Assembly (NCBI RefSeq): GCF_963853765.1
Contig: NC_088857.1
Location: 14,508,001-14,572,000, forward strand
Length of the DNA stretch: 64,000 bases
Direction of reading: 5' to 3'
Origin: Magallana gigas
Taxonomy: Eukaryota
Numbering within the stretch: position 1 is the first letter of the stretch; each line of letters opens with the position of its first letter. The translations under genes were made by a program, and so were the position numbers. This document shows, piece after piece, positions 12,262 to 41,395 of the stretch. Under the pieces are notes generated by a model. It worked only from the letters and a program-made list of their open reading frames with translations, did not search any database and was not told the DNA's origin.

Positions 12262-14988
12262 AAACTTTCAATTTGGGACTTGACAGACATATGTCATTAG
12301 CATAAACATTGATTAAAAAATCCAGAATAATTCTTTGGCATACTAATATTATCTGAGAATGAAAGTTATAGGCATCAAGGATATTTTGTTCTAAGACATC
12401 AATTCATACATCTAGTGCTTGATCACTATTTCAATAATACAAATCATACATGTATAGTTCGTGTAACTATCGTAGCAAGACGAAGCATTCGCTGGTTATC
12501 TTATCGTAAATTAATTACGATAATGGCATTTTAAACAGCGTGCGCATGATTTTGAAAATGTTTCTATTCCTGCAATAGTGTTTACCATGTTTAATTATAC
12601 CAAAAATATGTGTGACTGAATGACTATAAAAGAATTTGTTAAAATTGTTAAATAATAAGAGCACTGTTAAAATAAAATACAGCAAAAACATCATGAAATA
12701 ACGCTTAATTATTTAAGTAGTACGTCTTTCTTTTCACTTTTCTTACGACAATATTAATTACATGCATGTTGTTACAATATATGACACTTTTTTAAAACAC
12801 ATTTATTTTAAAAACTTTATCAGGCAGCTCCGACTCTGACACAGTTATCAATTATTTTTTTTTTGGTTACAAATAAATGCGTCTTATATTAAAACACATG
12901 GTCAACAACACCCTCCCCAAACCCTCCTATAAACCTTAATCTGATAATTCATTTTAAGTACAGAACAATGCAAATATATATTCTACATTTTCAACATTTC
13001 TTTGGGAACAAAACTAGGATTATATGATAAGACGCTAAATAAATATTGTGTAGTCTTGGGCGATAGCTGATAGTTACAAAAGTATACAAAACTGAGATTT
13101 TAGACGCAGCAAGGTGAATACTAGATATGAGGCCAATGAAGTTGAGCGTTTGTTGTGTTTTCAAAAAAGAATTGGTTTATTGCTTAACCTCCCATATAAT
13201 TATAGTTTTATGTTTTGAAGAGAAAGTCAATATAAAGATGCATTGCCATCTTGTATGAAATTATATTAAATCATATCAACCATTAAGTGTGACATTTATA
13301 TCTTTAAACCTACGATTCATTATAAACAGATTTGAATTCAAAATAAAATTTGATGATATGAAAACAATTATAAAATATAGTTGACTTTGAACCCTTTGTG
13401 AACGACACACATGTACATAAATCATTCATAGCAGACGTCTAAGATTGTCTACACCCTTCCGTTCAAGTGCAAGATTTTATTACGTAAATATAAAATAAAT
13501 ATAATAAAAATAATAAAAGTTACACCACTAATTTATATTTTAACCTTTTTTATCTGCCCCCCCCCCCCCCCCCCTCCAGTAAAAAAGGGATATAGAAGGA
13601 TAGAACCAAATTTTGCAAAGAAATTTCAACGTAATTTCAAAAGTCCACATAAAATTAAGGCATAATTGCTTTATCAACGTAAGAAAATTCCTAGTAAATG
13701 ATTTTGAATATGACTAGCTACTTACCGATGAAATGAGTACAAGACTGGTGATAAAATAGGGCTGCGGCCAAGTGGTAAACCGACGTACCTTACTGTACTT
13801 ATTGTGTCATCTCTTAAATAAAGGTCTAAAAGATTGGTCGTCCAACTAAATGTTTTTATTCATAAAAGTAAAATCAATCTTCTAAAATTTATCATGTTCC
13901 TGTATATGACTTGCTTATAAATAGATACAGTATCAATATAAAATTGCAATTAATCGGATATACAGTACCAGCAACGTTATTTTTTACAAGATAAACGAAA
14001 AATAGAATTTAAGCACGATACGATAGGATAAACGCACCGCACGAAAGAACAGAATTCACACATGCACGATACGATATGATTGATACACGATAGGAAAGGA
14101 TGAACGATGTTTTTGATAAACGTACGATCGCGTTAAATGATCTTCACGATTAACCTGATAATGACAGAATTTGACTAAAATAATACGTACGAATCAAGAT
14201 ATACGTGGAATTTCTTGTACATGTAACATTACAATGTAAATAGCAAGTAAAAATAGGTTGACACTTTTGTTTGAATATCATCTTTTATACAATCCCTTTT
14301 TATTTGGTGATATAATTTATCATTAAAACGCACGTTCATTCCTCTTGCTTAAACAACAAAAAAGACCCCCGCTAAGAATACTACACAGTAAAGGAGCTAA
14401 TGCTTTCAATTTCTGTAGACATGCAGTTCATGTTTATGCTAATGAATTCCAAAACGGTTTTAAGAAGTTATAAAATCTGACGTATGGTTGAATGATATAG
14501 CCTGTTTACGAGTGTAAATCATTGCCTTAAATACGAACAGGAGGAGTGAGTTACCATTTTTGTTGTATATAAATGTTATAATGTTTTCAAATGGTCGAAG
14601 CGAACTAAATAGCATGTTAATATGGCTGTTCTATGTATGTTTCATATCCCTGACTGAGAGCGTATATAATGGCTTTATAGCGACACTACTCATAATTATT
14701 TCACACAAATAGACATCAGTACAACATTTATTTTATTTTAATAACCGTGTACATTTACATGTAAAAGATTCCTTAAAAAAATTATACGTGGTACGATGTA
14801 TGACTGTATGATTTTCCTAGAATAATTCATGTATCTCTAGTCAAGTATTTATATTTTATACCACTTATAGAATGAAAAAATGTAACTTTCGATAATCTTC
14901 CATTCACTTAGCATTTTATCATTATGTAACTTACATAATTCAATCATTTAAAAAAAATCAAATCATTTTGTTAAAACAATTAACAAAT

Positions 14989-15764
14989 CTATAATTTAGG
15001 CACCAGCCTTTTTTTCTTCGCCTGCTTTTCAAAAATGGCTGAAGCATGGAAAATAAGTCTGCCATTCAAAAGAATTGAGAACTGGATGTGCTCCGGAGAC
15101 CCAGCTTCGTTCTGCCAAGTGTAGATGGACAGTTCGTCGTTTGCTCTGCTTTCACCCACATAGCTGATGGTCCACAGGAGAGGGGCATATAGACACATGT
15201 CCTCGTTGAAGTGCACGTAGTGACCACTCAAAGACGCATGCGTGGCAGCATCCATGCAGAATTTAATGTACGACGATTGGTTCACGTGGTTGTTTCGATC
15301 CGAGTCACTGTGGCGCGGAATCAAATCGAACTTGAAAGCGTTATCTGGAATTTTTGGCAAAGCGTCTCTGGGCAAAGCTTGTGTTGATCCGTAGGAATTT
15401 CTGTATGAGTCGTATTTTTCGTAGAACCATTCCGGAAACGTGACAGGACGTCTCGTTTTGCGAGACATCCGGACCATTTTAATCAAATTTTCACCATAAA
15501 CCTCCCTAGTGTTGCCATCTTTGAACTCAACAACGAACTGTACCGACGTTTTCCCGACTTCTACTAACCTCAAATCAAACAACATCGTAAATTTCACGTT
15601 CATGCCTTTTTCATGAAGCTTCGGGATTAGTTTCAGTTGTTGTTTGACAATCACCAAAGCCGCTTCCCTACCATCGATTTTCGTAAAGTCTATGAATCCA
15701 TTATACAATGCAAGGATACGGGCTGCTTCGAACATTTTCGATACATACCATATTGCCCAATGAC
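14989..15764 (-). CDS. Double hot-dog acyl-ACP/acyl-CoA thioesterase-like protein, copy 1, exon 2
   Basis: Acceptor TTTTAG|GTCATTGG, open to the stop at 14989. Contains SDSDRNNHVNQSSYIKFCMDA (DxNxHVN) and ISYVGESR (YxxE), matching the catalytic C-terminal hot-dog of FatA/FatB and bacterial acyl-ACP thioesterases. Confidence 0.88.
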
Positions 15765-15881
15765 CTAAAATAAACATGCAAATTTTGGCAAAATGAAAAC
15801 ATTGAAAACATTTCATCATCAAAACAATTGCTTAACACTGAAAAGTTATAACATGTTATTAAAAGCAAATATAAGAAAAAC

Positions 15882-16177
15882 ACACCGTTGCTTTTTTCAA
15901 AATCTTTAAAAACAATTATGTATTTCTTTCATCTAGTAACACTGTGTCGGATAAGTATGCCAGTGCCAAGGTGGAATTTTTGCACCTGCTTAGGATGCAG
16001 TTTTGTAAAAATTCATATACAATAAAAGACACCGTTGCTTTTTTCAAAATCTTTAAAAACAATTATGTATTTCTTTCATCTAGTAACACTGTGTCGGATA
16101 AGTATGCCAGTGCCAAGGTGGAATTTTTGCACCTGCTTAGGATGCAGTTTTGTAAAAATTCATATGCAATAAAAGAC
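15882..16177. repeat. Tandem duplication, 2 x 147 bp, in the intron of thioesterase copy 1
   Basis: ACACCGTTGCTTTTTTCAAAATC... starts at 15882 and 16029; the copies are near-identical. Confidence 0.9.
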
Positions 16178-16794
16178 AGACAATTTTCCCAAGCTTTTAA
16201 GGGTAGATGTCTACTTTCGTTTTTAGTGTTCCCCACCTATAAGGAGAGTTAATTATTTACCTTTAAAACTAGATATCCCAGAGGAAAATAATGATTTCCA
16301 TAAGAGAAATGATTTACCTACACCAAAATCTGAAAATCCCTTAAGATATTCTAAAATCCCTAGAGGAATTATATTTCCTGTAGGATTTAAATATTTCCTG
16401 TAGAAAATCGATTCAGACAGGTAGATTTTAATGTCCTATGAAAGTTTTGTTCAAATCCTATTCGAATTTAAATTCCTATGGAAAGTTCTTTTATTCTGAA
16501 AGGAATTTCCATCTATCCTTTGGCAAAATTGTTTTTCCTATGGGAAAAACAGGTTAGATACAATATTAACAAAGGTGGTTATAACTTCTCAAACAATAGT
16601 CTATCATATGGCATATTTGAATTTTTTAATGCATAAAGCTTGGACGGATACAAAAATGTCACCTTCAATGGCACTGGGATAATTATTCAGCACAGTGTTT
16701 ATTAGTTTTATTCATTTAGAAAGCAGAGTGCACGACATTGAATGTATTGTTTATACAAACAAATTTAAATCATTTAAATGTTATGTAACAGCAC

Positions 16795-16882
16795 CTGTTC
16801 TATCAAAATCAGCGTAAGGAATTCCAAAGAAGGAGACAGAGGCAGACGATCCTGTTGCATGGTTGATCTCGTAATGCGTCAT
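16795..16882 (-). CDS. Thioesterase-like copy 1, first coding exon
   Basis: MTHYEINHATGSSASVSFFGIPYADFDRT plus G, donor ACAG|GTGCTG. 88+776 nt gives 287 aa. The spliced YADFDRTGHW...MFEAAR matches the N-terminal hot-dog motif DxDxxgh...yfE.aR. Confidence 0.8.
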
Positions 16883-17374
16883 CTTCTGTGAAAAGAATGG
16901 TGGTAAACGATGCAGCCAAACAGACTAATATAAAATACATGAATCGTAATGTTGGTCAGTTTTTTGTACATACGCAAACATTTGCAGCTTCAAATGCATA
17001 TACTTTTTTTATCTTTTAAAAGATAAAGACGTAAGCATATTATAAATAGAGTATAGTACGCGTACATACTTATAATTTATCATAATATAAAATTTAAAAA
17101 ATATAACGCGCTAAATAAAATTCTAAGATTACTCCAAAGCGTTGTACAACAAAACTTGAAAATTGGCGTGATAAAACACACTTCAGATAAACGATGTAAA
17201 TGGAAAAAAAGGATAAATAACATTATAAAATACTGCTGTAACTGGTAAAACTCATATCTATATCAAAAAGAAGAAAATGAACAAGTGCTATGCAAGTAAT
17301 ATGTGCTATAATATAAGGAAGCAAGTTCAAGCAAAATGTTCAGAAAAACAAGAACGGCAAGTATTTAAAAAAGC

Positions 17375-18960
17375 TATTTCATAAAAATGTTTCTTTGAAT
17401 GTCTTTTAAAGATGTTCAAAGACTGTGCCTGTTTTATGTCGCCAGAAAGGAAATTCCACAAGTGCGCTGCTTGCCAGCTCTAGCTGGCATTCTCCGTATG
17501 TCTTTGTCAAGATTTTTTTGAGTCACTAAGAGAAATGTAAACTCAGACTGCAGTAATCTGGTGTGCTTAAATCAAAGTATTGAAGTCTTTGATATAGGAT
17601 GGAGCTTACCCGTGGAGCGATTGATAGACATATGTCAGTATTTTGCGCTGCGTACGAAAGTGCACAGGTAGCAAACGGAGATCTGCCAGGATCGGGGTGA
17701 TATGCTCCTGGGCTGCGTTCAAAATCGTAGCTGCTACCTATGGCTACGTAGTTGAACGGTAAGCTAATGCACTAACCTAGCCGCTACGTAGATATTCGTA
17801 GCCTGAATATTTTTCGTTAAGCATCAAATTCAAGATGACCACCTTAGTTACCACTTTGTAACAAACATGAAATCTATTTATACTCAGTGATATTTTGTTC
17901 ATTCTTTAAGTTATAATGAATTTTAACATGTATATTTCCGCTTGCAATTAACAAATTATGTTGATGTAATTAGTCTTTAGTTGAATATTTCCAACTTCAA
18001 ATCTGAGACCTAGCGGTCCGTTCAATAGACCTACATGTAGATATATACGACCTAGCGGCTAGGCTAGCTGCTACGATCTTGAACGCAGCCCTGTAACGAT
18101 GTTCTCGTGACAAGACATGCTGCAGTGTTTAGGGCACGTTGTATGTTTTCGAGGGTATGCTTTGCAACTCGATATAGAGTGCAGTTCCCGTTGTCCAGTC
18201 TGGCAGTGATTACAGCGTTAACCATGGTTTTGCAGGTTTTTTTGCGCCGTATACGCACAATATTGCATATCTGAAAATGACACGAAAATGACACGACTTG
18301 ACGATCGACGATACCTGTTTGACCATAGTGAGGTGTTGATCGAAAATGACACCCAGGTTCTTCACACAGGGCACACTTTCAATGGCATGATCACCAACTT
18401 TAAGCTTAAATTTTGGTAGATGTTTCTGATGCTTCATATGCATAGCAGTGATACATTATTCCATGTCAATGACATATGGCCCCAGTTGGTTTGGAGAAAA
18501 GGCAGCACAGTTTAGGTCCAAGAAAAGATCCTTGAGGAACACCATATGGAAGCTGACAAGAGTATGGCTTGATGGATCCAACGGTAACACATTGTCGCCT
18601 TCTCTGGAGCAATAAACTCTATCCAACTAACAGCAGTACCACGAAAACCACATGATGCAGTCAGACGTTGGAACAGTATGCTGTGGTCGATAACATCAAC
18701 AGCTGCTGATAAATCCAAGAGGATCAAAACTGCTGAAGATTGTTGGTCCTGTTGTGTAACAATATCATTGTGGACTTTCATTAGGGCCGTTTCCGTAGAA
18801 AGTCTGGTTCAATATTTCGACTGAAGTGGATCACGCAGAGAATTTGCATCAAGAGGACTGCCAATTTTACGAGATATTTTCTCCAGTATTTTTGAGATGA
18901 AAGTCAAGTTTGATAGGGGTCGAAAGTTTTTCAACACTTCCTTGTCAAAACCAGATATTA
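17375..18960 (-). mobile_element. 5'-truncated, decayed non-LTR retrotransposon (L2/CR1-clade reverse transcriptase)
   Basis: Fragments FDKEVLKNFRPLSNLTFISKILEK, STETALMKVHNDI...AVLILLDLSAAVDVIDHSIL, VKNLGVIFDQHLTM, HITPILADL, HG*APSYI and LWNFL...SLNIFKR occur in correct order, with many stops and frameshifts. Confidence 0.88.
17711..18090. mobile_element. 380-bp MITE (PIF/Harbinger-like) nested in the LINE
   Basis: 21-bp TIRs GGCTGCGTTCAAAATCGTAGC / GCTACGATCTTGAACGCAGCC (1 mismatch), 3-bp TSD CTG at 17708-17710 and 18091-18093. Removing it restores the LINE frame LVTRTSLQEHITPILADL. Confidence 0.85.
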
Positions 18961-21181
18961 AGATGTACATGTAGATACTCTTTAACCGTTTCATATTCTT
19001 GACTTTTTTCCTCAATTTTAAGAGTTTTCTTTTATAGGAGATGTTTTGGGGCTTAATTGTGATTTTTAACCTCTATATATATAAGTATGTATGAATTATG
19101 AAAACCTAAACAAGTTTTATACACTTAATACATTACATTTATGCTCGCTATAACTATTTGGATAGCTTTACATGTATACAGTAAAATTGCAAGTTACAAA
19201 TGGTAGGTAAAAACATGAAAGTTGGGTGGAAGGACATAAATATAGTAAACTACAGACAGGTAAGTTTCTGTCATGTAAAAGTGCGACATGCATATGGTAC
19301 GGCCGGATTGTCAACCCTTTGCTGGGAGTTATAACCGGTGGATGTCTTAAACGCTGAAAATCATGAATAAAAATGTAATGTTGATAATTTAACCATTATA
19401 ATAAGTAATTTTCCCCAAAACTCGGAGGATGATAAAGAGTGAAATAGGAGGAAATTCTATAGTTATAGAGTTCCGAAGACACATGTCCTCTTCCTTACAT
19501 TGATATAAAAAGGCCGTCTCTTACTACTTTTAATTCAAAATCACAAAATGTTCAGCTATATATTAAAAAAAAAACCAGATATACGAAACCTCAAAGAGTT
19601 TTAGATTAAAGCACTCTCTGATTAAAGGTAGAATAAATGAAAAGATCTCGGATATTTTTGTTGGAAAGTTTTCCTTCTTACCTAATAACAAGGTGATAAT
19701 GTAGAACTGTGGTGAGGTGCAAGGTACAATTTAGAGTTGCCTAACTTTTGTACGGTACACCATTACGGCAAAAATTGAAGGCCAAAAAGTAGTTTTCTCA
19801 TTGAGAATCATTTTCTCCAAAAATATTCTCTTTAAATTCTGGTGGTATAGTTATCAATATTCAAAAATACTTCTTCACGGTATTTTATTTTTTTTTGGAG
19901 GGGGGGGGGTTGCATTTTAGGTAATTATAAGAACGACTGATCTAGTTTTTACTCGAGGTAAAATAAGATCGGCCATACTGTACCGACAGTTAGTATTACA
20001 TATCTTTGCGTATTAATAACTCTTAACACGCCACAGCTGTGTGTAGTTTAATTATAAAGTGACAAATTTTTTTCAAATAGTTATACTTTTTTATAAATAC
20101 ATATTCTTGAGTAATTTAAGATTATGTACAATTTTCAAAATTGTAAAATGGTGTATTATTTTTAAGTGTTTTGGATAACTATGAATGATTTTTTTTTTTC
20201 GTTATCTGAGAAAAATCATATACACAAAGATAGATACTTTGAGTTATACTCTGTCCCGAGTTTTTGCTTCCACCACTTTTCGCTTGATATTTCGAGAATA
20301 ATAAATACCTTTGTACTCAAACAAAGTTCATCCACTTAAATATGAAAAATGTCCAGATTATCTGTTTTGAAATGCCCCCTATATCGCTTCAAGTTTCAAT
20401 ACACATCCAAAAATATAAAGTCTACGGGGATTTTGCATTGCATCAGCCATTAAAAAGCCCGGATGATAACGTTAAAAAATTGCGGGAGGTGTCCCGAGTA
20501 CTTCCGAATGGAGAAAAGATGTAAACATTTCCCATTAAAAATCTCCGTAAAAAATTTGTTTTCGTTCCTGTAAACATTAATGAGTGAAAAGGGATAATTT
20601 TTCAATGAAGATATCTAGGATATTTTTCATTTCATCGATTTCAACCGTACTTCTTTCACAGGTTTGTGTATTTTTATTAAAAATCATCAAAAAGTGATGG
20701 AAGCAATAGTTTGGGACAGATTATAATATTGTTTATTTGCCACAAACAGCACGATCTTTGCTTGTGTCTCCACCAAACGACACCATAAAAACAGATAGCT
20801 TACGCACAGCGAGGTACAGACTCAACATCATTTGTTTCGTGGTTCTTAAAAAACATATTTTCCTTAGTCTTTGATTTTCATCCAGAGACGAATTTAATGG
20901 TAAAATGAATTTATAGGGTAAGGATTATCATGCATAAAGATTTTTTTCATAAAAAGGTCATTCTAGAAAATCAGTCATTATAAGTATGTTTAAAATTAGT
21001 TATTATAAGTATCTTCAAGTACCGACAGCACTGAACTGCTACACTATCTGTACCAACTGCGTAATATTCATAACAATTTCTTAAAATGATGAATTAATAT
21101 TAATTTATTTTGTCAATACGTACTTGATTCTTGTATAAATTCACATATTTTATCTCACGGAAGAAATAAAAATAATATCGC

Positions 21182-21957
21182 TTAGATTTTTGATAATGAG
21201 GATGCGACTTTCTTTGCCTCCTTCTCAAAAATGGTTGAGGCATGGAAAATAAGTCTGTCGTTCAAAAGTATTGAAAACTCAATGTGCTCCGGGGACGAAC
21301 TTTCGCTCTGCCACGTGTAGATGGACAGTTCGTCGTTTGCTCTGCATTCACCCACATAGCTGATGGTCCACAGGAGAGGGGCATATAGACACATGTCCTC
21401 GTTGAAGTGCACGTAGTGACCACTCAAAGACGCATGCGTGGCAGCATCCATGCAGAATTTGATGTACGACGATTGGTTCACGTGGTTGTTTCGATCCATA
21501 TCACTATAGTTTGGGACTAGACGGAATTCGAAAGCGTTGTCTGGAATATCTGGCAAAGCAGTTTTGCTTCGAAACTGTTGTTTCTGCGGGCTCTCATGTA
21601 GTTCAAGTGATTTGATGTACCACTCAGGAAATGAAATTGAACGTCTTGTTTTACGACTGAATCTGACAAATTTGAGAAAGGTTTCACCAAGCCTCTCTTT
21701 CGTGGACCCGTCTCTGAGCTCTGTCACATTCGTAATGGACCTTTCTCCGACTTCCAGTAATTTCACATCGAACAACAAATGAGATTGTGGTTTCAGTTTT
21801 ATCTGATGAACTTTGGGATTTAATTTAATCTCTTGTTTAGCGATCACTATAGTTTCGTCTTGGTGATAGATTTTAGCCAAATCCAAAAATCCATTGTACA
21901 AAGCTAAAGCTCTAGATGCCTCAAACATTTTGGAAATACACCATACTGCCCAATGGC
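21182..21957 (-). CDS. Double hot-dog thioesterase-like protein, copy 2, exon 2
   Basis: Acceptor TCTAG|GCCATTGG, 776 nt, colinear with copy 1. Contains SDMDRNNHVNQSSY and ISYVGECR. Confidence 0.88.
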
Positions 21958-22630
21958 CTAGAGAAATTGAAGAAGAAATCGTGTGTCTATCAGATTATAT
22001 TACGGTTGCAATTATTTCCGATACAGGTACAAAATTTTCATAAACCAACTACCGTCATACCCATTATGAACACAAAAAGGAACCATTTTATCATTTTAAG
22101 GTAGGTTTTGCGGCTGGAATTTTCAGGCACTGTACAGAGTTACATACCATTTTGTTCACTATACTAAAAGTCTTTTTCTTATAAATTTCAAGTGATGTTG
22201 CCTCACCCCTTTTATAGCTACAAAATGTCAAAATTAATGATTTTGTCATGTTGATGAAATGTTAGTAATTTCGTGAAAAATGTACATTTTATGTGTAACT
22301 ATTGAAGGGGTGATTTATGCTTAACATGTTCGAAATTCATGTCATTATTTATATCATGGTTAATTTTTATTGATTTCTAATAGACTATTTAAGGACGTTG
22401 TTTACTCAGAATTTGAGTTCTCAAATTCGGATTGTTAAAATGAGTAAAATTTGTTCTAAACACTAAAAGAATAGAATAAAATGCAACAAAAGTCAAAATT
22501 TTGGGCTGAAATTAAATGTAACTTTCCAAGTCCACAGATTTCAGAAGAAACTTATCTTAGTAAATGTATAATTTGGTGTTTCTAGAAAATAATTAGAAAC
22601 CTTTTATCATTTAAACTACATGTACACTAC

Positions 22631-22718
22631 CTGTTCTATCGAAATCAGCGTACGGAATTCCATAAAAGGAAATAGAAGCAGATGATCTTGACACCGAGTG
22701 GATTTCGTAATTCGACAT
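22631..22718 (-). CDS. Thioesterase-like copy 2, first coding exon
   Basis: MSNYEIHSVSRSSASISFYGIPYADFDRT plus G, donor ACAG|GTAGTG. Same 88-nt length and phase as copy 1; total 287 aa. Confidence 0.8.
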
Positions 22719-24806
22719 TTTAAAATCTAAAAAGTAAAAAGTAATGCAACTGTCAAAATATAGAATGCTAGACTTAAAATGGAATAGAGATTTTTTAAGA
22801 CATAGCAATCACCTTACCTTTCTTTTCAACTTTATTAAAATTCGATGTTTTGTATCTTAGACACCGATTGCTTTTCTCTCTACATCAATTCCGCGAGGGT
22901 TGAAAAATATTATATTTTCAAGTAAAATAAAGATATCAAAATTTTAAGAACAAGGGCTGGACCTAGCATAACGTTAGTTCTGAATTAACTTGATGTATGT
23001 AGATTTACAATATGCGCCCCCCCCCCCCCCCCCCTTGTAACAAGTGTTTCCAGAAATGTTTTCTAGAAACACTGTAACAAGAATTCTGAGATAAATTTTG
23101 ACCGTGGTTAATGAAACATCACCAGACAAGTCAACGAATTTTGACCTTCCAAATCTATTACCACGACAGCCGATGACATCTGGAGAGGAATTTTCAAAAA
23201 CAAACTCAGGCGTGAGGGACAGTTCATGCATGGAATATTAACATTAGGTTTTTATTAAGAAATGATTGTTTAATTAATTTTTGAATTTAATTAAGTGCAT
23301 GATATGGGTCCAATGTTTTGATATTTTGCAAACTTATAATCACATTCTCATTCATGAAGAAAGCTAACCGAAAAACGTTCAATACACGTTAGTCTCGTTC
23401 TATTTATTAACCCCATTCGGAAGCTTGCAAATGAGGCTAAACAAAACATTTTTTAAAAATCAGAAATTCTGTACATCGGTAATTTAATAAATTCTTTAGC
23501 TTTATCATAAGGAATTTTTGAACAAAAAAGCTCAGGTAAAAACAAACACTTACACTGTCACTCGGGTAGAACCTCCTTCTACTGATAAAGAATAGAGTTA
23601 TCGGTCTTAGGTTACATTATAAAATTGTATGGTGGACTAGTTAAGTTATAATTCTATATATGAATTGGTATTATCTCGAAAATTATTTTGATATTTTATC
23701 TACTCTAAAACTCATAAATATCTACATTTTGTTTAAATGATAAATGCCGTGTGATACCCATTGTATAACCTAGCAATTCAAACCTTATTTATGAATACGA
23801 TACTATATGGAGAAGGCTTACATAGGCATTGCCTGCTGCCTAATCCATTTATGTAAATGTATATTTGCATAATAAAATATGTTCAAATCAAATTAAAAAA
23901 ATCAATACTATACTATAACTACTGGTATTGAATTAATTATAAAATATCATATCATAAAGGGTTTGCTAAAGTGTTTTAAAGAACTGTAAAACTATACACT
24001 TTAGTACCCTCTCTTTAATTGGACTACAGGCATAACAGAGAACAACAATAATTTATAACTGCAAATCATTCAGCACATTAAATCATCTATGGTCATGATA
24101 TGAGCTGAAAATCTAAAAATTTAATATTTTTATACTGGATGTATACATTTTTTTTTATCAATGTTATGCAACAGTCAGGCCGTGGTATTTTTTTTTTTCA
24201 TTTTGATAACTGATTACAAAATATCAAATTTAAAACAAATTTAAAGATGACAACTCTAGAAAATATTCATTTGTTGCTTTAAAAATTGTAACAAACAGAA
24301 CAATCTGCTTATACGGACCTTTTACCAGAAAATATTGAACTAATTAAAAAAAATAATGACACGGGTCATATTACAGAACAATAATTGTGAGCTTTGTATC
24401 TTCTTTTAACTCTACAAATGACGTTATAAGTTAAGTTGACCATTAGAAATACCTCACATAACCGTTGAAAACAGTAAAAATGGATTACATGTAATCGAAG
24501 AAAATTTTCAGCTAAAATCGTGAGCATGCCCCTTTAAACATCAATAAGCAGTGAGTAGTAGTAGGCCGGGATGTGTCAAGTGAGCCTTCCTATAGAATTA
24601 TTTGATCTCCCTTCTATTCAACACACTACATGAACCACGAGTACAGTAATATTGGCAGAATTGCCACTAAGGTATGTAATTTGACTTTTTCTTGGTATTT
24701 TCAACAAAGAACATGAAATGAACCCAAAATATTTTGTTTGACAATACCTGACTTATATGAATTAAAATGTTTTAAAAGGGAGGGATTTCGAAACAGTGTT
24801 AATCAC

Positions 24807-25796
24807 TTAAAGGTTTGAAAATGGAAATACTATTTCCTTCGCCTGCTTCTCAAGAATCGTTGAAGCATGCACAATTAGTCTGTTGTTCAAGAGAATTGAG
24901 AACTGAATGTTCTCAGGATATCCAGCCTCGTTCTGCCAAGTGTAGATGGACAGTTTGCTGTTCGCCTTTCTTTTTACGACATAGCTGATGGTCCACATGA
25001 GAGGGGCGTATAGAAACAAGTCATCATCGAAGAGCACGTAGTGACTGCTTACAGACGCACATTCAAGGCAGATTCCATGCAGAATTTTTTGTACAAGATT
25101 GGTTTATGTGGTTGTTTCGATCCATATCACTATAGTTTGAGACAACAAGAAATTTGAAAGTGTTGTCTGAAAATTTTAGCAAAGCCTTTTTGCCTTAAAA
25201 CTGTTGTTTCTGTGGATTCTCTATGTTTCAAAGGTTTGATGAACGATTCAGGAAGTGACATTGAATGTCGTGTTTTTCGACTACTAGTATTCTGACAAAT
25301 TTAATAAGGGTTTCACCAAGGCTCTCTTTGGTGGACACGTCTTTAAGCTCTGTCACATATGTAAGGGACCTTCCTCCGACATCAAGCAATTTCACATTAA
25401 ACAACAAATAAGATTGGGATTTCAATCTTATCCGATGAACTTTGGAATTCAATTTGATCCGTTTTCTTACGATCACATGGCTGCGTCTTGGTAGTGGGTT
25501 TAAGAGAAATCCATAAATTATTTATTCAAAGTTAAAGCTCGGTATACATCAAACATTTTATAATGCACCTTGTTGCCCAATGGCTTAGCTAGAGAAATGA
25601 GCGAAAATTATTGTATCACTCAGATTATAACAGTTGCAATCATTACAGAAAACAAGAAAAACAAAAATGGCAGCATTTCATCCTTTTAAACTACATGTAC
25701 GGTACCTGTTCCATCAAAATCGGCGTAAGGGATTCCAAATAAGGAAACAAGGAGGAAACGTAAACAGAGGATATTGACTTCAAGAGAATTTTGCAT
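24807..25796 (-). pseudogene. Thioesterase-like copy 3, pseudogene
   Basis: Exon 1 (25706-25796, ...FGIPYADFDGT) is intact. Exon 2 has a 1-nt deletion after HWA, an in-frame TAA and further frameshifts. Homologous peptides LLFNVKLLDVGGRS and YAPLMWTISYV remain. Confidence 0.85.
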
Positions 25797-39418: not shown

Positions 39419-40240
39419 ATTCCCTTACTAAAGAAATCAATTGTTTACTTAAATAAATCGGTATAAAGTGCAGATTACGGAGGGAGTGAATAAGAACAGC
39501 TGTTTATAAAACCGGTTTAAACTGTAAAAATGTCTAAAATCATTAAAGACTCAGTATAAAATTTCATAAACAAAATACCATAAATTGTTGTACGCACAGT
39601 CCTTTATAGATCTAAATAGATTGAGTGGGGGGATAATTAGAAGGAAAACTGTTTGATAGTGATGATGAATGTTAGAAGCGGAATTACGTAAGACACATCC
39701 CATCCTCTGTATCCGTCACGTTCACACAGTTCCGCCTCACGTTCTCGCGCCATTGCGTCAGTGACCTTCACAGAAGCTACGTGATTTGTTATTGTATGGC
39801 GACCCTGTCGGGACACAATTCCATTGCAGCGAGGAATTAAAAGTCGCTTGTTCTGCTTGATTTCTCAGAATATCTACATAGTTATACAATAAATATGAAG
39901 ACTACATATTTAAATTACAATAACCTATGATTGCACGTGGAGTTTGATTCAAGAATAATGTTATTTAAAGCACAGTGTAAAGAATCGAATCTTAAAAATA
40001 TTTTTGCCCCGTTTGACCTACTGCAGGGTACATTGTAATTATAAACAGTGCGATCTCGTCACGTTCCTCTGCTAAGCGCCTTACAACCGGTATATATATA
40101 TTTGCTATGCCTTACACATTGACTGGTATTTTGAATTTGTCTTGGAAGTGTTTACAATCCAACCTTTTTTAATTCAGGGAGAAAAATTCTACCATATATT
40201 TTGAACATTGTTCAGGACAGATGAGAATTTAACTTCAAAT

Positions 40241-41327
40241 ATGATAGGCCTTTTGATTAAAAATCCAGCGCTTCTGACAAGTGTGTTTTCGGCCGTTCTT
40301 CTACAGAATGGGATTCGTATGTCTACATGTGCCTTGAATTCAAAATTCAGTCATGAAACTGGTACAGTTATTTCTCGAAGCCCACCCGGATTGAACTCGG
40401 GGCTGAAGCTTTGGTGGGCAAAGCAAGTCACCCCTGAATATTACGTGGCGGGAAGACTGAGCAGACGACAGTTACAATACGCGGCCGAAGGAGGCTTTAA
40501 AAGTGTTGTTTCTTTATTTACATACGAGAACGACAAAGACTGCTGTTTTGGGATGGACTATTTACCCGCAACATCCAAAATGGCTACGATTGCCAAAGAC
40601 TCTGGACTTCAGTTTAGAACCGTGATGGATTCGGCGGGGACCTTGACATCTTCCGCCGATTCCGTTTCACAACTAAAACAGGCACTGAACAATATCCCCA
40701 CTCCCGTACTTGTGCTTTCAGACCGGGGCTACAGTGCAACATTTACTTTGTTTATGTATTTATTAAATTATGACAAGAATTTTACGATGGACAGAGCTGC
40801 TGCTATAAGTCATGTGTTGGGAATGGACTTGAGTATGAAATGTATCAATCAGAAACTGTGTAAGGTAACCGGAGAAAATGTCGAGTTTTCTAAGTTAGAT
40901 AAATTACCAAAGCAGTGGCTGAATTACTGGCATGCTATACCCGTATATAAGAATTGGTTTGTGGCAGGGCAAATTTTGGAATCACATATTCCTCGCATCA
41001 TGCAAGCTGGGTTCAAATCCGTTGTGAACCTTCGAGCTGGTACAACCCACAAGGGGAAACCAGCACAAGAAAAAGTTACACTGATGAATATTGCGGACAA
41101 TTCTAAGACCTATGGTGATGAGAATTTAGGTCCCAGACAGAGTATAGACGCGTTAAAACAAAAGATTCTTGATCCCCTTAAAGAGAACTCATATGTATCC
41201 CCGAATTCATCACACAATTTCGCCACGTCCAATCCAGAAGAATTCGGAGATCTCATTGGTTATAACGAAGATCTTGAAAAACTCGCCTTTCGTAAAGCAG
41301 GGTTCCCTTATTATCACTTACCAGTTG
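40241..41327 (+). CDS. Tandem DUF442/BLH phosphatase-like (rhodanese-type) domain protein, exon 1
   Basis: Two repeats: YYVAGRL...AEGGFKSVVSL...GLQF...PVLVLSDRGYSA and WFVAGQI...QAGFKSVVNLR...AGFPYYHLPV, matching the DUF442 pattern sGQi...GfktiINlR...Gl.Y.hiPv...PVlxyCxSGxR. Donor G|GTAGGT. ATG 40241 is the first in-frame ATG. Confidence 0.85.
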
Positions 41328-41395
41328 GTAGGTATTAAAATCCAATACACATTATGGGAGAAATGAAGTGAAATCTGTTATATATTCAAGCGTTG

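What the first reader, a model, noticed from the sequence alone, without database searches (positions are those of the whole stretch)
14989..25796. Tandem array of plant/bacterial-type acyl-ACP thioesterase-like genes in an animal
Seen: three head-to-tail paralogues with the same phase-1 intron after FDxTG; two are intact (287 aa) and one is dead. Each intact copy has an N-terminal hot-dog motif (YADFDRTGHW...FE.xR) and a C-terminal DxNxHVN...YxxE(C/S). Established: DxNxH plus YxxEC is the catalytic signature of FatA/FatB and bacterial acyl-ACP thioesterases, which set fatty-acid chain length, and the N-terminal hot-dog carries substrate specificity. Animals normally use the FASN-integrated thioesterase. 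Inference: a lineage-specific, possibly horizontally acquired and now intron-bearing family. Its N-terminal halves (about half identical by hand count over 103 aa) may be diversifying in substrate, for example in lipid, polyketide or pigment offloading. Animal hot-dog ACOT/THEM genes offer a vertical alternative.
Basis: partly seen in the sequence, partly recalled or inferred. Interest (0 to 1): 0.7.

Follow-up and report, generated by a model that had tools for sequence, protein, structure and literature searches.

The report
Tandem oyster double hot-dog thioesterase genes
Two expressed genes and one dead copy in an oyster encode enzymes built like the plant and bacterial fatty-acid-releasing thioesterases, but the family is old and widespread in marine invertebrates and most members carry a peroxisome address tag, so they more likely cut fatty acyl-CoA inside peroxisomes than set chain length in fatty-acid synthesis.

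Summary
There are three head-to-tail minus-strand paralogues. Two are intact (287 aa, two coding exons, phase-1 GT..AG intron after FDRTG) and one is a pseudogene. Both intact copies are transcribed and spliced as predicted.

The proteins are TE14-type double hot-dog thioesterases:
- hhalign against 80 bacterial acyl-ACP thioesterases gives 99.6% probability over 233 columns.
- FatA, FatB and bacterial TE14 structures are the top fold hits (Z 17-19).
- Asp185, Asn187, His189 and Glu234 match the FatA catalytic centre, and Asp, His and Glu are near-invariant in 144 relatives.

The "lineage-specific, possibly horizontally acquired" reading is not supported:
- Named members come from bivalves, gastropods, an annelid, a brachiopod, a hemichordate and amphioxus.
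- This oyster has at least 14 intact loci plus the pseudogene, and all break at the same exon boundary.
- No close bacterial relative was seen.

One point is new. Of 143 relatives, 66 end in a strict peroxisomal PTS1 tripeptide, against about 0.5 expected by chance. The window copies end in -PKL and -SKI. Peroxisomes have no known ACP, so a peroxisomal acyl-CoA thioesterase role is the most likely one. This is inferred, not shown.

A 183-nt gene-conversion tract homogenises the catalytic segment of the two live copies, while their N-terminal halves are only about 52-56% identical.

The scan also noted a sister four-gene array elsewhere in this genome.

The parts
14989..15764 (-). Copy A, last coding exon (residues 30-287 plus stop). 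The transcript runs on at least to 14800 as 3' UTR.
   Evidence: Open frame and AG acceptor at 15766-15765. RNA coverage and an X2 contig spanning 14800-15301.
15765..16794 (-). Copy A intron, 1030 nt, phase 1, GT..AG
   Evidence: Sequence. The joint 15764|16795 is seen in X2 contigs and in raw polyA reads of X21 and X22.
16795..16887 (-). Copy A first coding exon (ATG at 16882, 88 nt of CDS). An upstream splice boundary lies at 16887.
   Evidence: An X2 contig matches 16793-16887 and then continues into other sequence.
19684..19713 (-). Part of a 5' non-coding exon of copy A. Its limits were not determined.
   Evidence: The 30-nt continuation of the X2 contig beyond 16887 maps here with 2 mismatches. 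It is the only match in the window.
15277..15300 (-). Copy A catalytic motif D185-R-N187-N-H189-V-N-Q192
   Evidence: Translation. It aligns to the FatA/FatB DxNxHVNN motif. Asp is conserved in 143/144 relatives, His in 143/144 and Asn in 102/144.
15151..15153 (-). Copy A Glu234 (of YVGES), equivalent to FatA Glu300
   Evidence: (135/144 conserved). FatA residues are from PMC12713704.
14992..15000 (-). Copy A C-terminal tripeptide -PKL, a PTS1-like signal preceded by KKKRLV
   Evidence: It fits the broad metazoan PTS1 consensus quoted in PMC8919083.
21121..21957 (-). Copy B last exon (CDS 21957-21182; 3' UTR to about 21121)
   Evidence: The transcript contig L013 aligns to 21959-21121 at 98.3%.
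21958..22630 (-). Copy B intron, 673 nt, phase 1, GT..AG
   Evidence: It is absent from transcript contig L013.
22631..22726 (-). Copy B first coding exon (ATG at 22718)
   Evidence: L013 positions 52-148 match 22726-22630 at 100%.
23554..23604 (-). Copy B 5' non-coding exon (at least this part)
   Evidence: L013 positions 1-51 match at 100%.
21473..21496 (-). Copy B catalytic motif DRNNHVNQ (residues 184-191). Glu233 lies at 21347-21349.
21185..21193 (-). Copy B C-terminal tripeptide -SKI (PTS1-like)
24807..25796 (-). Copy C, a pseudogene. It has an exon-1-like segment at 25796-25706, a short intron remnant, a destroyed acceptor (AG to AA), and frameshifts and stops in the exon-2 remnant.
15119..15301 (-). 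Gene-conversion tract in copy A. Its partner in copy B is 21315-21497. The tract is 183 nt with 2 mismatches.
   Evidence: dS is 0.11 for residues 181-245 against more than 1.4 upstream.
21315..21497 (-). Gene-conversion tract in copy B
15884..15981 (-). Minor alternative cassette exon inside the copy A intron. It is 98 nt and breaks the frame.
   Evidence: Joints 15762>15884 and 15981>16791 in X2 contigs at lower depth.

Best explanation
The locus is a recent tandem expansion of one branch of an old animal gene family. It holds two live genes and one pseudogene.

The family encodes divergent TE14-type (FatA/FatB/bacterial acyl-ACP-thioesterase-like) double hot-dog thioesterases. Each protein is one chain of two hot-dog domains.

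By analogy with FatA and FatB, the N-terminal domain should form the acyl-chain pocket. The C-terminal domain supplies the catalytic centre: Asp185, Asn187, His189, Gln192 and Glu234 in copy A.

The proteins have no N-terminal targeting extension. They end in a PTS1-like tripeptide (-PKL and -SKI), as do most relatives in other phyla, where -SKL is the commonest ending. They are therefore most likely imported by PEX5 into the peroxisomal matrix. There they would hydrolyse acyl-CoA thioesters and release free fatty acid and CoA during beta-oxidation or chain shortening.

The two live copies keep an identical catalytic segment through gene conversion. Their N-terminal halves have diverged under purifying selection, which fits different acyl preferences with one chemistry.

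Shown here: the gene structures, transcription and splicing, the fold class, the conserved residues, the taxonomic spread and the PTS1 enrichment.

Inferred: the thioesterase activity, the peroxisomal location, the acyl-CoA substrate and the divergence in specificity.
For: Gene models and the pseudogene.

Expression:
- The splice joint of A appears in RNA contigs and raw polyA reads. Strand-specific coverage fits a minus-strand RNA.
- A spliced transcript contig of B exists, with a 5' UTR exon.

Selection: dN/dS is 0.29.

Fold and family:
- The AF2 model has pLDDT 80.
- The 44 best Foldseek PDB hits are all acyl-ACP thioesterases, at E about 1e-14 and TM 0.6-0.7.
- VIA gives Z 17.4-19.1 for TE14 structures.
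- The top 11 Swiss-Prot models are plant FatA/FatB; ACOT7, 9, 10, 11 and 12 fall lower, with rmsd 9-12 A.
- hhalign against 80 bacterial TE14 proteins gives 99.6% probability, E 8e-25, over 233 collinear columns.
- The C-terminal halves nest among bacterial TE14 C-domains (support 92). Holding the animal and TE14 N-halves together is not rejected (p-AU 0.66, higher likelihood).
- The nearest non-animal ESM Atlas clusters are bacterial TE14.

Catalytic centre: alignments to FatA/FatB, FatA residues from PMC12713704, and conservation in 144 relatives.

PTS1:
- 66 of 143 relatives end in [SAC][KRH][LMI], against 0.5 expected. At any other offset the count is 0-3.
- 92 of 144 fit the broad consensus, against 5.6% of the zebrafish proteome.
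- The signal is present in bivalves, gastropods, an annelid, a brachiopod, a hemichordate and amphioxus.
- 13 of the 15 ostreid-clade sequences (the window's two copies included) fit the consensus; the other two end -AKY and -RKL.
- The C-terminal tail is disordered in the model.

Age of the family: named members in six animal groups, and at least 14 intact loci in this genome that all start at the same profile position, meaning a shared intron.
Against: - No enzymatic or localisation data exist for any member.
- -PKL and -SKI are non-canonical, weak PTS1 variants, so targeting may be partial or dual.
- About a third of relatives lack a PTS1. This includes one paralogue clade of this genome (C2 22.9-23.1 Mb, C5 7.12 Mb).
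- The FatA Asn269 position is Gln in these proteins.
- Pfam PF01643 (TE14 N-terminal domain) is not matched by the window proteins. PF20791 also rings in genomes without Fat-type enzymes.
- Each half is about as similar to single hot-dog 4HBT_2 thioesterases as to TE14 halves. In the free tree search the N-halves sat next to three single-domain proteins.
- LnmK, a double hot-dog acyltransferase/decarboxylase, scores only 1-2 Z units lower.
Confidence: 0.55

Rival explanations
1. The proteins are cytosolic acyl-ACP thioesterases that act in trans on the ACP domain of the animal FAS, or of TE-less FAS-like PKSs (AFPKs). They would set chain length or offload lipids, polyketides or pigments.
For: - TE14 fold and catalytic centre.
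- No N-terminal targeting sequence.
- -PKL and -SKI are weak signals, and some paralogues lack a PTS1.
- Mollusc AFPK clades 1-3 lack a TE domain and their offloading is unknown (PMC10764717).
Against: - The family-wide terminal PTS1 is ancestral to both main branches of the family tree.
- No ACP is known in peroxisomes (general knowledge).
- No PKS or FAS gene was seen in the window's larger ORFs.
- The family also occurs in phyla for which I have no AFPK information.
Confidence: 0.15
2. The double hot-dog arose independently in animals by fusing two 4HBT_2-type single hot-dog domains. On this view it resembles TE14 by convergence, not by sharing TE14's fusion event. The function would still be a thioesterase.
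For: - Each half matches bacterial single hot-dog thioesterases at 98% probability. The summed score (189) is similar to the full-length TE14 score (170).
- Single-domain PDB thioesterases score as well as FatB against the family profile.
- The N-half keeps a DxDxxGH motif like single-domain enzymes.
- In the free tree search the N-halves join three single-domain sequences.
Against: - The alignment to TE14 is collinear across both domains and the linker.
- The C-halves nest within TE14 C-domains.
- The tree with animal and TE14 N-halves held together has a higher likelihood (p-AU 0.66).
- TE14 structures are the best whole-chain matches.
Confidence: 0.15
3. The genes were recently acquired by horizontal transfer from a bacterium or alga into the oyster lineage.
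For: TE14 enzymes are otherwise typical of bacteria and plastid-bearing eukaryotes. The Fat subfamily table in PMC516016 lists no Metazoa.
Against: - Named homologues occur in six animal groups.
- There are at least 14 intact paralogous loci with a shared intron position.
- Among the ~45 clusters's 150 listed hits that I could name or check, all were animal; bacterial TE14 reach only about 50 bits against the family profile.
- The animal N- and C-halves are each monophyletic (support 100 and 98).
- GC content and intron structure are typical of the host.
Confidence: 0.03
4. The proteins are members of the pan-metazoan ACOT/THEM hot-dog families (ACOT7/8/9/11/12, THEM4/5/6).
For: Pfam 4HBT_2 matches 51 of 53 members. 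From memory, that family also covers THEM6. ACOT7 is a double hot-dog and scores Z 15.4.
Against: - Animal ACOTs rank below all TE14 entries, with rmsd 9-12 A and 9-12% identity.
- No ACOT-type or TesB-type Pfam family was matched.
- The architecture is two domains with no membrane anchor, unlike THEM6 (from memory).
Confidence: 0.03
5. The hot-dog scaffold serves a non-hydrolytic function, for example an LnmK-like acyltransferase/decarboxylase, a dehydratase or a binding protein.
For: LnmK scores Z 17.0-17.3, close to TE14. Hot-dog folds are functionally diverse (PMC516016).
Against: - The Asp/Asn/His/Glu set typical of TE14 thioesterases is conserved.
- Sequence identity to LnmK is 11%, against 16-20% to Fat enzymes.
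- Profile matches are to thioesterases only.
Confidence: 0.07

Closest known systems
TE14 acyl-ACP thioesterases: plant FatA/FatB (e.g. AtFatA, UcFatB 5X04) and bacterial homologues (2ESS, 2OWN, 4GAK)
   Same: - One chain of two hot-dog domains of about the same length.
- Full-length collinear profile match (99.6%).
- A linker motif TRRP.
- A catalytic Asp-x-Asn-x-His-Val-Asn motif and a downstream Glu-(Cys/Ser) in the C-terminal domain.
- These are the best structural matches.
   Different: - This is an animal nuclear gene with a conserved intron.
- There is no plastid transit peptide.
- It carries a C-terminal PTS1-like signal.
- Sequence identity is only 13-20%.
- The FatA Asn269 position is Gln.
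- The N-terminal half keeps a DxDxxGH motif.
- The Pfam TE14 N-domain model is not matched.
- The likely substrate is acyl-CoA, not acyl-ACP.
Peroxisomal acyl-CoA thioesterases of animals (ACOT8, a TesB-type double hot-dog; ACOT3-6, alpha/beta-hydrolases)
   Same: The inferred role is the same: PTS1-targeted hydrolysis of acyl-CoA in the peroxisomal matrix. Like the mouse ACOT cluster mentioned in PMC8919083, the genes form tandem clusters.
   Different: It is a different structural family. ACOT-type folds score clearly lower, and the alpha/beta-hydrolase ACOTs are unrelated. No orthology is implied.
Single hot-dog 4HBT_2/YbgC/FadM-type thioesterases
   Same: Each half matches them at 98% probability. 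The DxNxHVN motif and the C-terminal strand motif are shared. They are acyl-CoA thioesterases.
   Different: Those are single-domain proteins of about 130-150 aa that form the active site across a homodimer. Here two domains are fused, and only the C-terminal one keeps the full catalytic set.
Mammalian thioesterase II (OLAH), a trans-acting chain-length-setting TE for FAS
   Different: It has an alpha/beta-hydrolase fold, is cytosolic and has no PTS1. No homology is implied (general knowledge).

Membership tests
TE14 acyl-ACP thioesterase (Fat) family | Two tandem hot-dog domains in one chain of about 250-300 residues | tested here: met
   - The AF2 model has two helix-plus-sheet units.
- Whole-chain matches to TE14 structures give Z 17-19 over 206-229 aligned residues.
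- hhalign aligns 233 columns.
TE14 acyl-ACP thioesterase (Fat) family | Catalytic centre in the C-terminal domain: Asp, Asn, His, a second Asn, and Glu (AtFatA D262, N264, H266, N269, E300) | tested here: met
   D185, N187, H189 and E234 are present and aligned. Across 144 relatives, Asp is kept in 143, His in 143 and Glu in 135. The N269 position is Gln192 (Gln in 75 relatives, Asn in 19).
TE14 acyl-ACP thioesterase (Fat) family | Match to the curated family models (Pfam PF01643 N-domain and PF20791 C-domain) | tested here: inconclusive
   PF20791 scores above its cut-off for both window proteins and for 41 of 53 relatives. PF01643 matches only 3 of 53. PF20791 also rings in 9 of 14 control genomes, including E. 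coli, so it is not specific.
TE14 acyl-ACP thioesterase (Fat) family | Both halves are orthologous to the TE14 N- and C-domains, meaning the fusion event is shared | tested here: inconclusive
   The C-halves nest in TE14 C-domains (support 92). In the free search the N-halves sit beside single-domain proteins, but the constrained tree is better (p-AU 0.66). The alignment has only 136 columns.
TE14 acyl-ACP thioesterase (Fat) family | Hydrolysis of acyl-ACP of a type II fatty-acid synthase (plastid or bacterial setting) | not testable with these tools
   No assay was possible. The setting differs: an animal gene, no transit peptide, and a PTS1-like C-terminus.
PTS1-targeted peroxisomal matrix proteins | C-terminal tripeptide fitting the PTS1 consensus on an accessible tail | tested here: met
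   - -PKL and -SKI fit [ASCNPHTG][RKHQNSL][LMIVF].
- 66 of 143 relatives fit the strict motif, at the terminal position only.
- The tail has pLDDT below 50.
- Copy A has basic residues upstream of the tripeptide.
PTS1-targeted peroxisomal matrix proteins | PEX5-dependent import into peroxisomes | not testable with these tools
   This needs a localisation experiment.
Animal type II ACOT / TesB-like thioesterases | ACOT-type or TesB-type hot-dog domains as the best sequence and fold match | tested here: not met
   No such Pfam family was matched. ACOT7, 9, 10, 11 and 12 rank below all Fat entries, with rmsd 9-12 A. ACOT7 scores Z 15.4 against 17-19 for TE14.
Single-domain 4HBT_2 thioesterases (including THEM6-like) | One hot-dog domain per chain | tested here: not met
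   PF13279 matches both halves, but the protein has two fused domains.

The most novel reading that the evidence does not exclude
Some members with a weak PTS1 or none, possibly including the -PKL and -SKI copies here, may work in the cytosol as free-standing release enzymes for the TE-less animal FAS-like polyketide synthases of molluscs. Their diverged N-terminal pockets would choose the product. That would fill the 'offloading mechanism unknown' gap stated in PMC10764717.
Probability: 0.08. Interest if true: 0.8.

Novelty: new variant of a known kind. Interest (0 to 1): 0.5.

Why it matters
TE14 thioesterases are textbook plant and bacterial enzymes that end fatty-acid synthesis. A sizeable, expressed animal branch would be a new class of peroxisomal thioesterase. 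This branch is spread over molluscs, annelids, brachiopods, hemichordates and amphioxus, and it mostly carries a peroxisomal signal.

It would also be a case of an enzyme scaffold moved to another compartment and another thioester carrier.

I saw no named vertebrate, insect or nematode member. If that absence holds, the family would have escaped study because it is missing from the main animal models. This absence was not tested systematically.

The family is expanded in the oyster, with at least 14 intact loci, several in tandem arrays. That may bear on how marine invertebrates shape their unusual fatty-acid pools.

The enzymes could also be of use as chain-length-selective acyl-CoA thioesterases.

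For the genome scan itself, the lesson is that the DxNxHVN motif and a Pfam 'acyl-ACP' label do not identify the substrate.

Tried and rejected
- The search for related loci with the diverse alignment A3 failed because no conserved stretch was found.
- The search for homologous proteins with alignments A3 and A4 returned few extra proteins because of its word limit. Taxonomy therefore rests on three cluster look-ups covering 30 clusters.
- Six literature searches found no paper describing this animal family or a natural peroxisomal TE14 enzyme (plus the AFPK search). Absence from that library is not proof of novelty.
- The larger ORFs elsewhere in the window gave no functional context: only weak DUF3850 and BLH_phosphatase matches.
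- A plant/protist/bacterial whole-family phylogeny could not be built. No plant Fat sequences were available by reference, and the bacterial sample was picked by one DNA motif, so it is biased. The origin of the family, whether ancient vertical descent or ancient transfer, stays open.
- P0001, which looks like a hybrid of the A N-terminus and the B C-terminus, is probably an assembly join across the 183-nt identical tract. An X2 contig shows the same join. I do not count it as an allele.
- I did not run complex prediction (for example with PEX5 or an ACP), because no suitable partner sequence was in hand.
Homologues at 52-68% identity in Ostrea and Saccostrea point to another ostreid oyster. 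This is an inference.

Full report
**1. The observation**

The region holds three head-to-tail copies on the minus strand.

- Copy A: ATG at 16882. The first 88 nt of CDS end at 16795, followed by GT. The intron ends with AG at 15766-15765. The second exon runs from 15764 to the stop at 14989-14991.
- Copy B has the same layout: 22718-22631, then 21957-21182.
- Both give 864 nt and 287 aa. The intron is phase 1 and lies inside the Gly codon of FDRTG|HW.
- Copy C (25796-24807) keeps a recognisable first exon with a GT donor. Its acceptor AG has become AA, and the second exon has several small indels and in-frame stops. It is a pseudogene.

**2. Are the genes real and in use?**

- dN/dS between A and B is 0.29, with dS about 0.87.
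- Reads and contigs from RNA libraries laid on 14800-17100 cover both coding exons. They show the predicted joint 15764|16795 in X2 contigs and in raw polyA reads of two further runs. In the raw-read runs, exon coverage is all first-mate-on-plus, which in most stranded libraries means a minus-strand RNA.
- A 989-nt Logan contig (L013) encodes copy B without its intron and adds a 5' non-coding exon at 23604-23554.
- Copy A likewise has an upstream non-coding exon near 19.7 kb.
- A minor 98-nt cassette exon inside the copy A intron would break the frame.

**3. What the proteins are**

Sequence searches:
- Pfam gives 4HBT_2, and Acyl-ACP_TE_C above its cut-off.
- A sequence search of the PDB finds plant acyl-ACP thioesterases first.
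- The family profile finds UcFatB and the Chlamydomonas enzyme first, at E about 1e-12. Single hot-dog thioesterases (YbgC, FadM and others) score almost as well.

Structure searches, using an AF2 model with mean pLDDT 80 that shows two hot-dog units:
- The 44 best Foldseek PDB hits are all FatA, FatB or bacterial TE14.
- VIA-align gives Z 17.4-19.1 for TE14, 17.0-17.3 for LnmK and 15.4 for ACOT7.
- In Swiss-Prot models the first 11 hits are plant Fat enzymes. Animal ACOTs follow with rmsd 9-12 A.
- ESM Atlas searches put mollusc clusters first, then bacterial TE14 clusters.

Comparison with bacterial proteins. I fetched 120 bacterial loci through the DNA pattern for DxNxHVNNxxY. From these I took 80 typical 230-290-aa TE14 proteins and 17 single hot-dog proteins.
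- hhalign of the animal alignment against the bacterial TE14 alignment gives 99.6% probability and E 8e-25, over 233 collinear columns across both domains and the linker.
- Each half also matches the single-domain set at 98%.
- In a domain-level tree, the animal N-halves and C-halves are each monophyletic (support 100 and 98).
- The C-halves nest among TE14 C-domains (support 92).
- In the quick free search the N-halves sat next to three single-domain sequences. The tree that holds animal and TE14 N-halves together has a higher likelihood (p-AU 0.66).

I read this as a divergent branch of the TE14 double hot-dog lineage. An independent fusion of 4HBT_2-type domains is not excluded.

**4. Catalytic centre**

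PMC12713704 gives Asp262, Asn264, His266, Asn269 and Glu300 as the proposed FatA catalytic centre. It places that centre in the C-terminal half and the substrate cavity in the N-terminal half. PMC5830452 says the same for FatB and 2OWN.

The alignments equate these residues with Asp185, Asn187, His189, Gln192 and Glu234 of copy A.

In 144 relatives the counts are Asp 143, His 143, Glu 135 and Asn187 102. The position after Glu is Ser, Cys or Ala.

The motif is not unique to Fat enzymes. Bacterial single hot-dog thioesterases carry it too, and PF20791 rings in 9 of 14 control genomes, including E. coli.

**5. How old and how wide is the family?**

- The profile of the ostreid proteins finds 755 cluster representatives at E up to 1e-3, and 456 at up to 1e-10.
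- Named members come from many bivalves (Ostrea, Saccostrea, Tegillarca, Mytilus, Argopecten, Mizuhopecten, Pecten, Ruditapes, Potamilus).
- Outside bivalves they come from gastropods (Haliotis, Patella, Babylonia), the annelid Owenia, the brachiopod Lingula, the hemichordate Ptychodera and the cephalochordate Branchiostoma.
- An unnamed 330-kb contig carrying tandem copies has LINE-type genes around it, which suggests an animal genome.
- An AFDB hit, B3RZD5, is a Trichoplax entry from my memory of the accession. This is unverified.
- The window's own genome has at least 14 intact loci besides the pseudogene, including four-gene arrays at C5 12.05-12.08 Mb and C2 22.9-23.1 Mb. All of them begin to match at profile position about 30-34, which is the same exon boundary.
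- Bacterial TE14 proteins reach only about 50 bits against the family profile.

A recent or oyster-specific horizontal acquisition is therefore very unlikely. Whether the animal branch descends vertically from an early eukaryote or from an ancient transfer cannot be settled here.

**6. The peroxisomal signal**

Reading the C-termini of the family, I found that most end like a PTS1.
- Among 143 relatives the commonest endings are SKL 25, AKL 9, SKI 8, SRL 6, HKL 5 and PKL 4. Sixty-six fit [SAC][KRH][LMI].
- Composition predicts 0.5 such matches. The same motif occurs 0-3 times at each of the other 26 offsets from the end.
- Ninety-two of 144 fit the broad metazoan consensus. PMC8919083 reports that consensus as matching 5.6% of zebrafish proteins. 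The same paper treats -PKL as the PTS1 of Idh1 and -SKI as a weak PTS1 of human ACOT6.
- The signal occurs in members from every named group and on both main branches of the family tree, so it is probably ancestral.
- The 15 ostreid-clade sequences, counting the window's two copies, all end x-[KR]-[LIMY], although the preceding residues vary.
- The tail is disordered in the model.
- The proteins start directly with the first hot-dog domain, with no presequence.

Peroxisomes have no known ACP (general knowledge). The probable substrates are therefore acyl-CoAs, and the probable role is that of a peroxisomal acyl-CoA thioesterase. This changes the functional reading of the finding. It remains an inference. 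The two window copies carry weak variants, and one paralogue clade has no signal.

**7. The tandem pair**

- A 183-nt stretch (A 15119-15301, B 21315-21497) differs at 2 positions.
- dS there is 0.11, against more than 1.4 upstream, so this is gene conversion and not mere constraint.
- The stretch covers the Asp/Asn/His motif through the Glu.
- The N-terminal halves are 52-56% identical, with dN/dS 0.13-0.19.

The pattern fits two enzymes with one chemistry and different acyl pockets. No positive selection was shown.

De Bruijn contigs join A and B across this tract, which explains the hybrid protein P0001.

**8. Literature**

Six searches found nothing on this animal family or on a natural peroxisomal TE14 enzyme. 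The 2004 hot-dog survey lists the Fat subfamily only in plants, Firmicutes and Bacteroidetes.

Databases label some members 'Acyl-ACP thioesterase' automatically and most 'uncharacterized protein'.

PMC10764717 notes that mollusc AFPK clades 1-3 lack a TE domain and that their offloading is unknown. That keeps a low-probability but interesting alternative alive.

**9. Verdict**

- The fold and motif assignment is supported.
- Horizontal or lineage-specific origin is not supported.
- The acyl-ACP role is doubtful.

The best reading is an expressed tandem pair, plus a pseudogene, of an old, uncharacterised animal branch of TE14-type thioesterases that is mostly addressed to peroxisomes. Confidence in the full statement is 0.55.

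An earlier first-stage note on the conversion tract (s1-361765) agrees with my test. Another note (s1-380951) describes the sister array at C5 12.05 Mb, which I also detected.

Noticed in passing
window 15119-15301 and 21315-21497: A 183-nt tract is nearly identical (2 mismatches) between otherwise diverged paralogues A and B. dS is 0.11 there against more than 1.4 elsewhere, so this is gene conversion over the catalytic segment.
   Followed up: yes
window 15884-15981 (inside the copy A intron): RNA contigs show a 98-nt cassette exon that would break the reading frame. It lies next to a duplicated element (the ORF at 15944-16252 repeats itself). Reads there have loose ends typical of a dispersed repeat.
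   Followed up: partly
P0001 and X2 contigs at window 15301: Public de Bruijn contigs join copy A sequence to copy B sequence at the identical tract. This gives a hybrid protein that is probably an assembly artefact.
   Followed up: partly
G000 C5:12045128-12077241; C2:22888490-23086393; also C5:14.97 Mb, C5:7.12 Mb, C2:44.26 Mb, C3:23.24 Mb: There are at least 12 further intact loci of the same family in this genome (14 with the window's two live copies), two of them four-gene tandem arrays. All share the exon boundary. The C2 22.9-23.1 Mb and C5 7.12 Mb members lack a PTS1-like end, while C5 14.97 Mb ends -SRL and C2 44.26 Mb ends -SKI.
   Followed up: partly
window 18064-19015, minus strand: Short overlapping ORFs between copies A and B look by eye like a decayed reverse-transcriptase (retroelement) remnant. 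One piece tested had no Pfam match.
   Followed up: no
window 40208-41338, plus strand: A 376-aa ORF has a weak BLH_phosphatase (DUF442) match, E 5.8e-5, below the Pfam cut-off. An earlier first-stage note (s1-361663) concerns this gene.
   Followed up: no
window 36754-37740, plus strand: A 328-aa ORF has only a weak DUF3850 match, E 3e-4, below the cut-off.
   Followed up: no
Pfam PF20791 control search: The 'Acyl-ACP thioesterase C-terminal domain' model scores above its cut-off in 9 of 14 control genomes, including E. coli, B. subtilis and Haloferax. A hit to it does not by itself identify a Fat-type enzyme.
   Followed up: no
L017 (ENA contig ctg32543l, 330 kb): An unnamed, animal-like contig (LINE RT and endonuclease genes) carries at least two adjacent copies of the family. 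Tandem arrays of these genes may therefore be common outside oysters.
   Followed up: no
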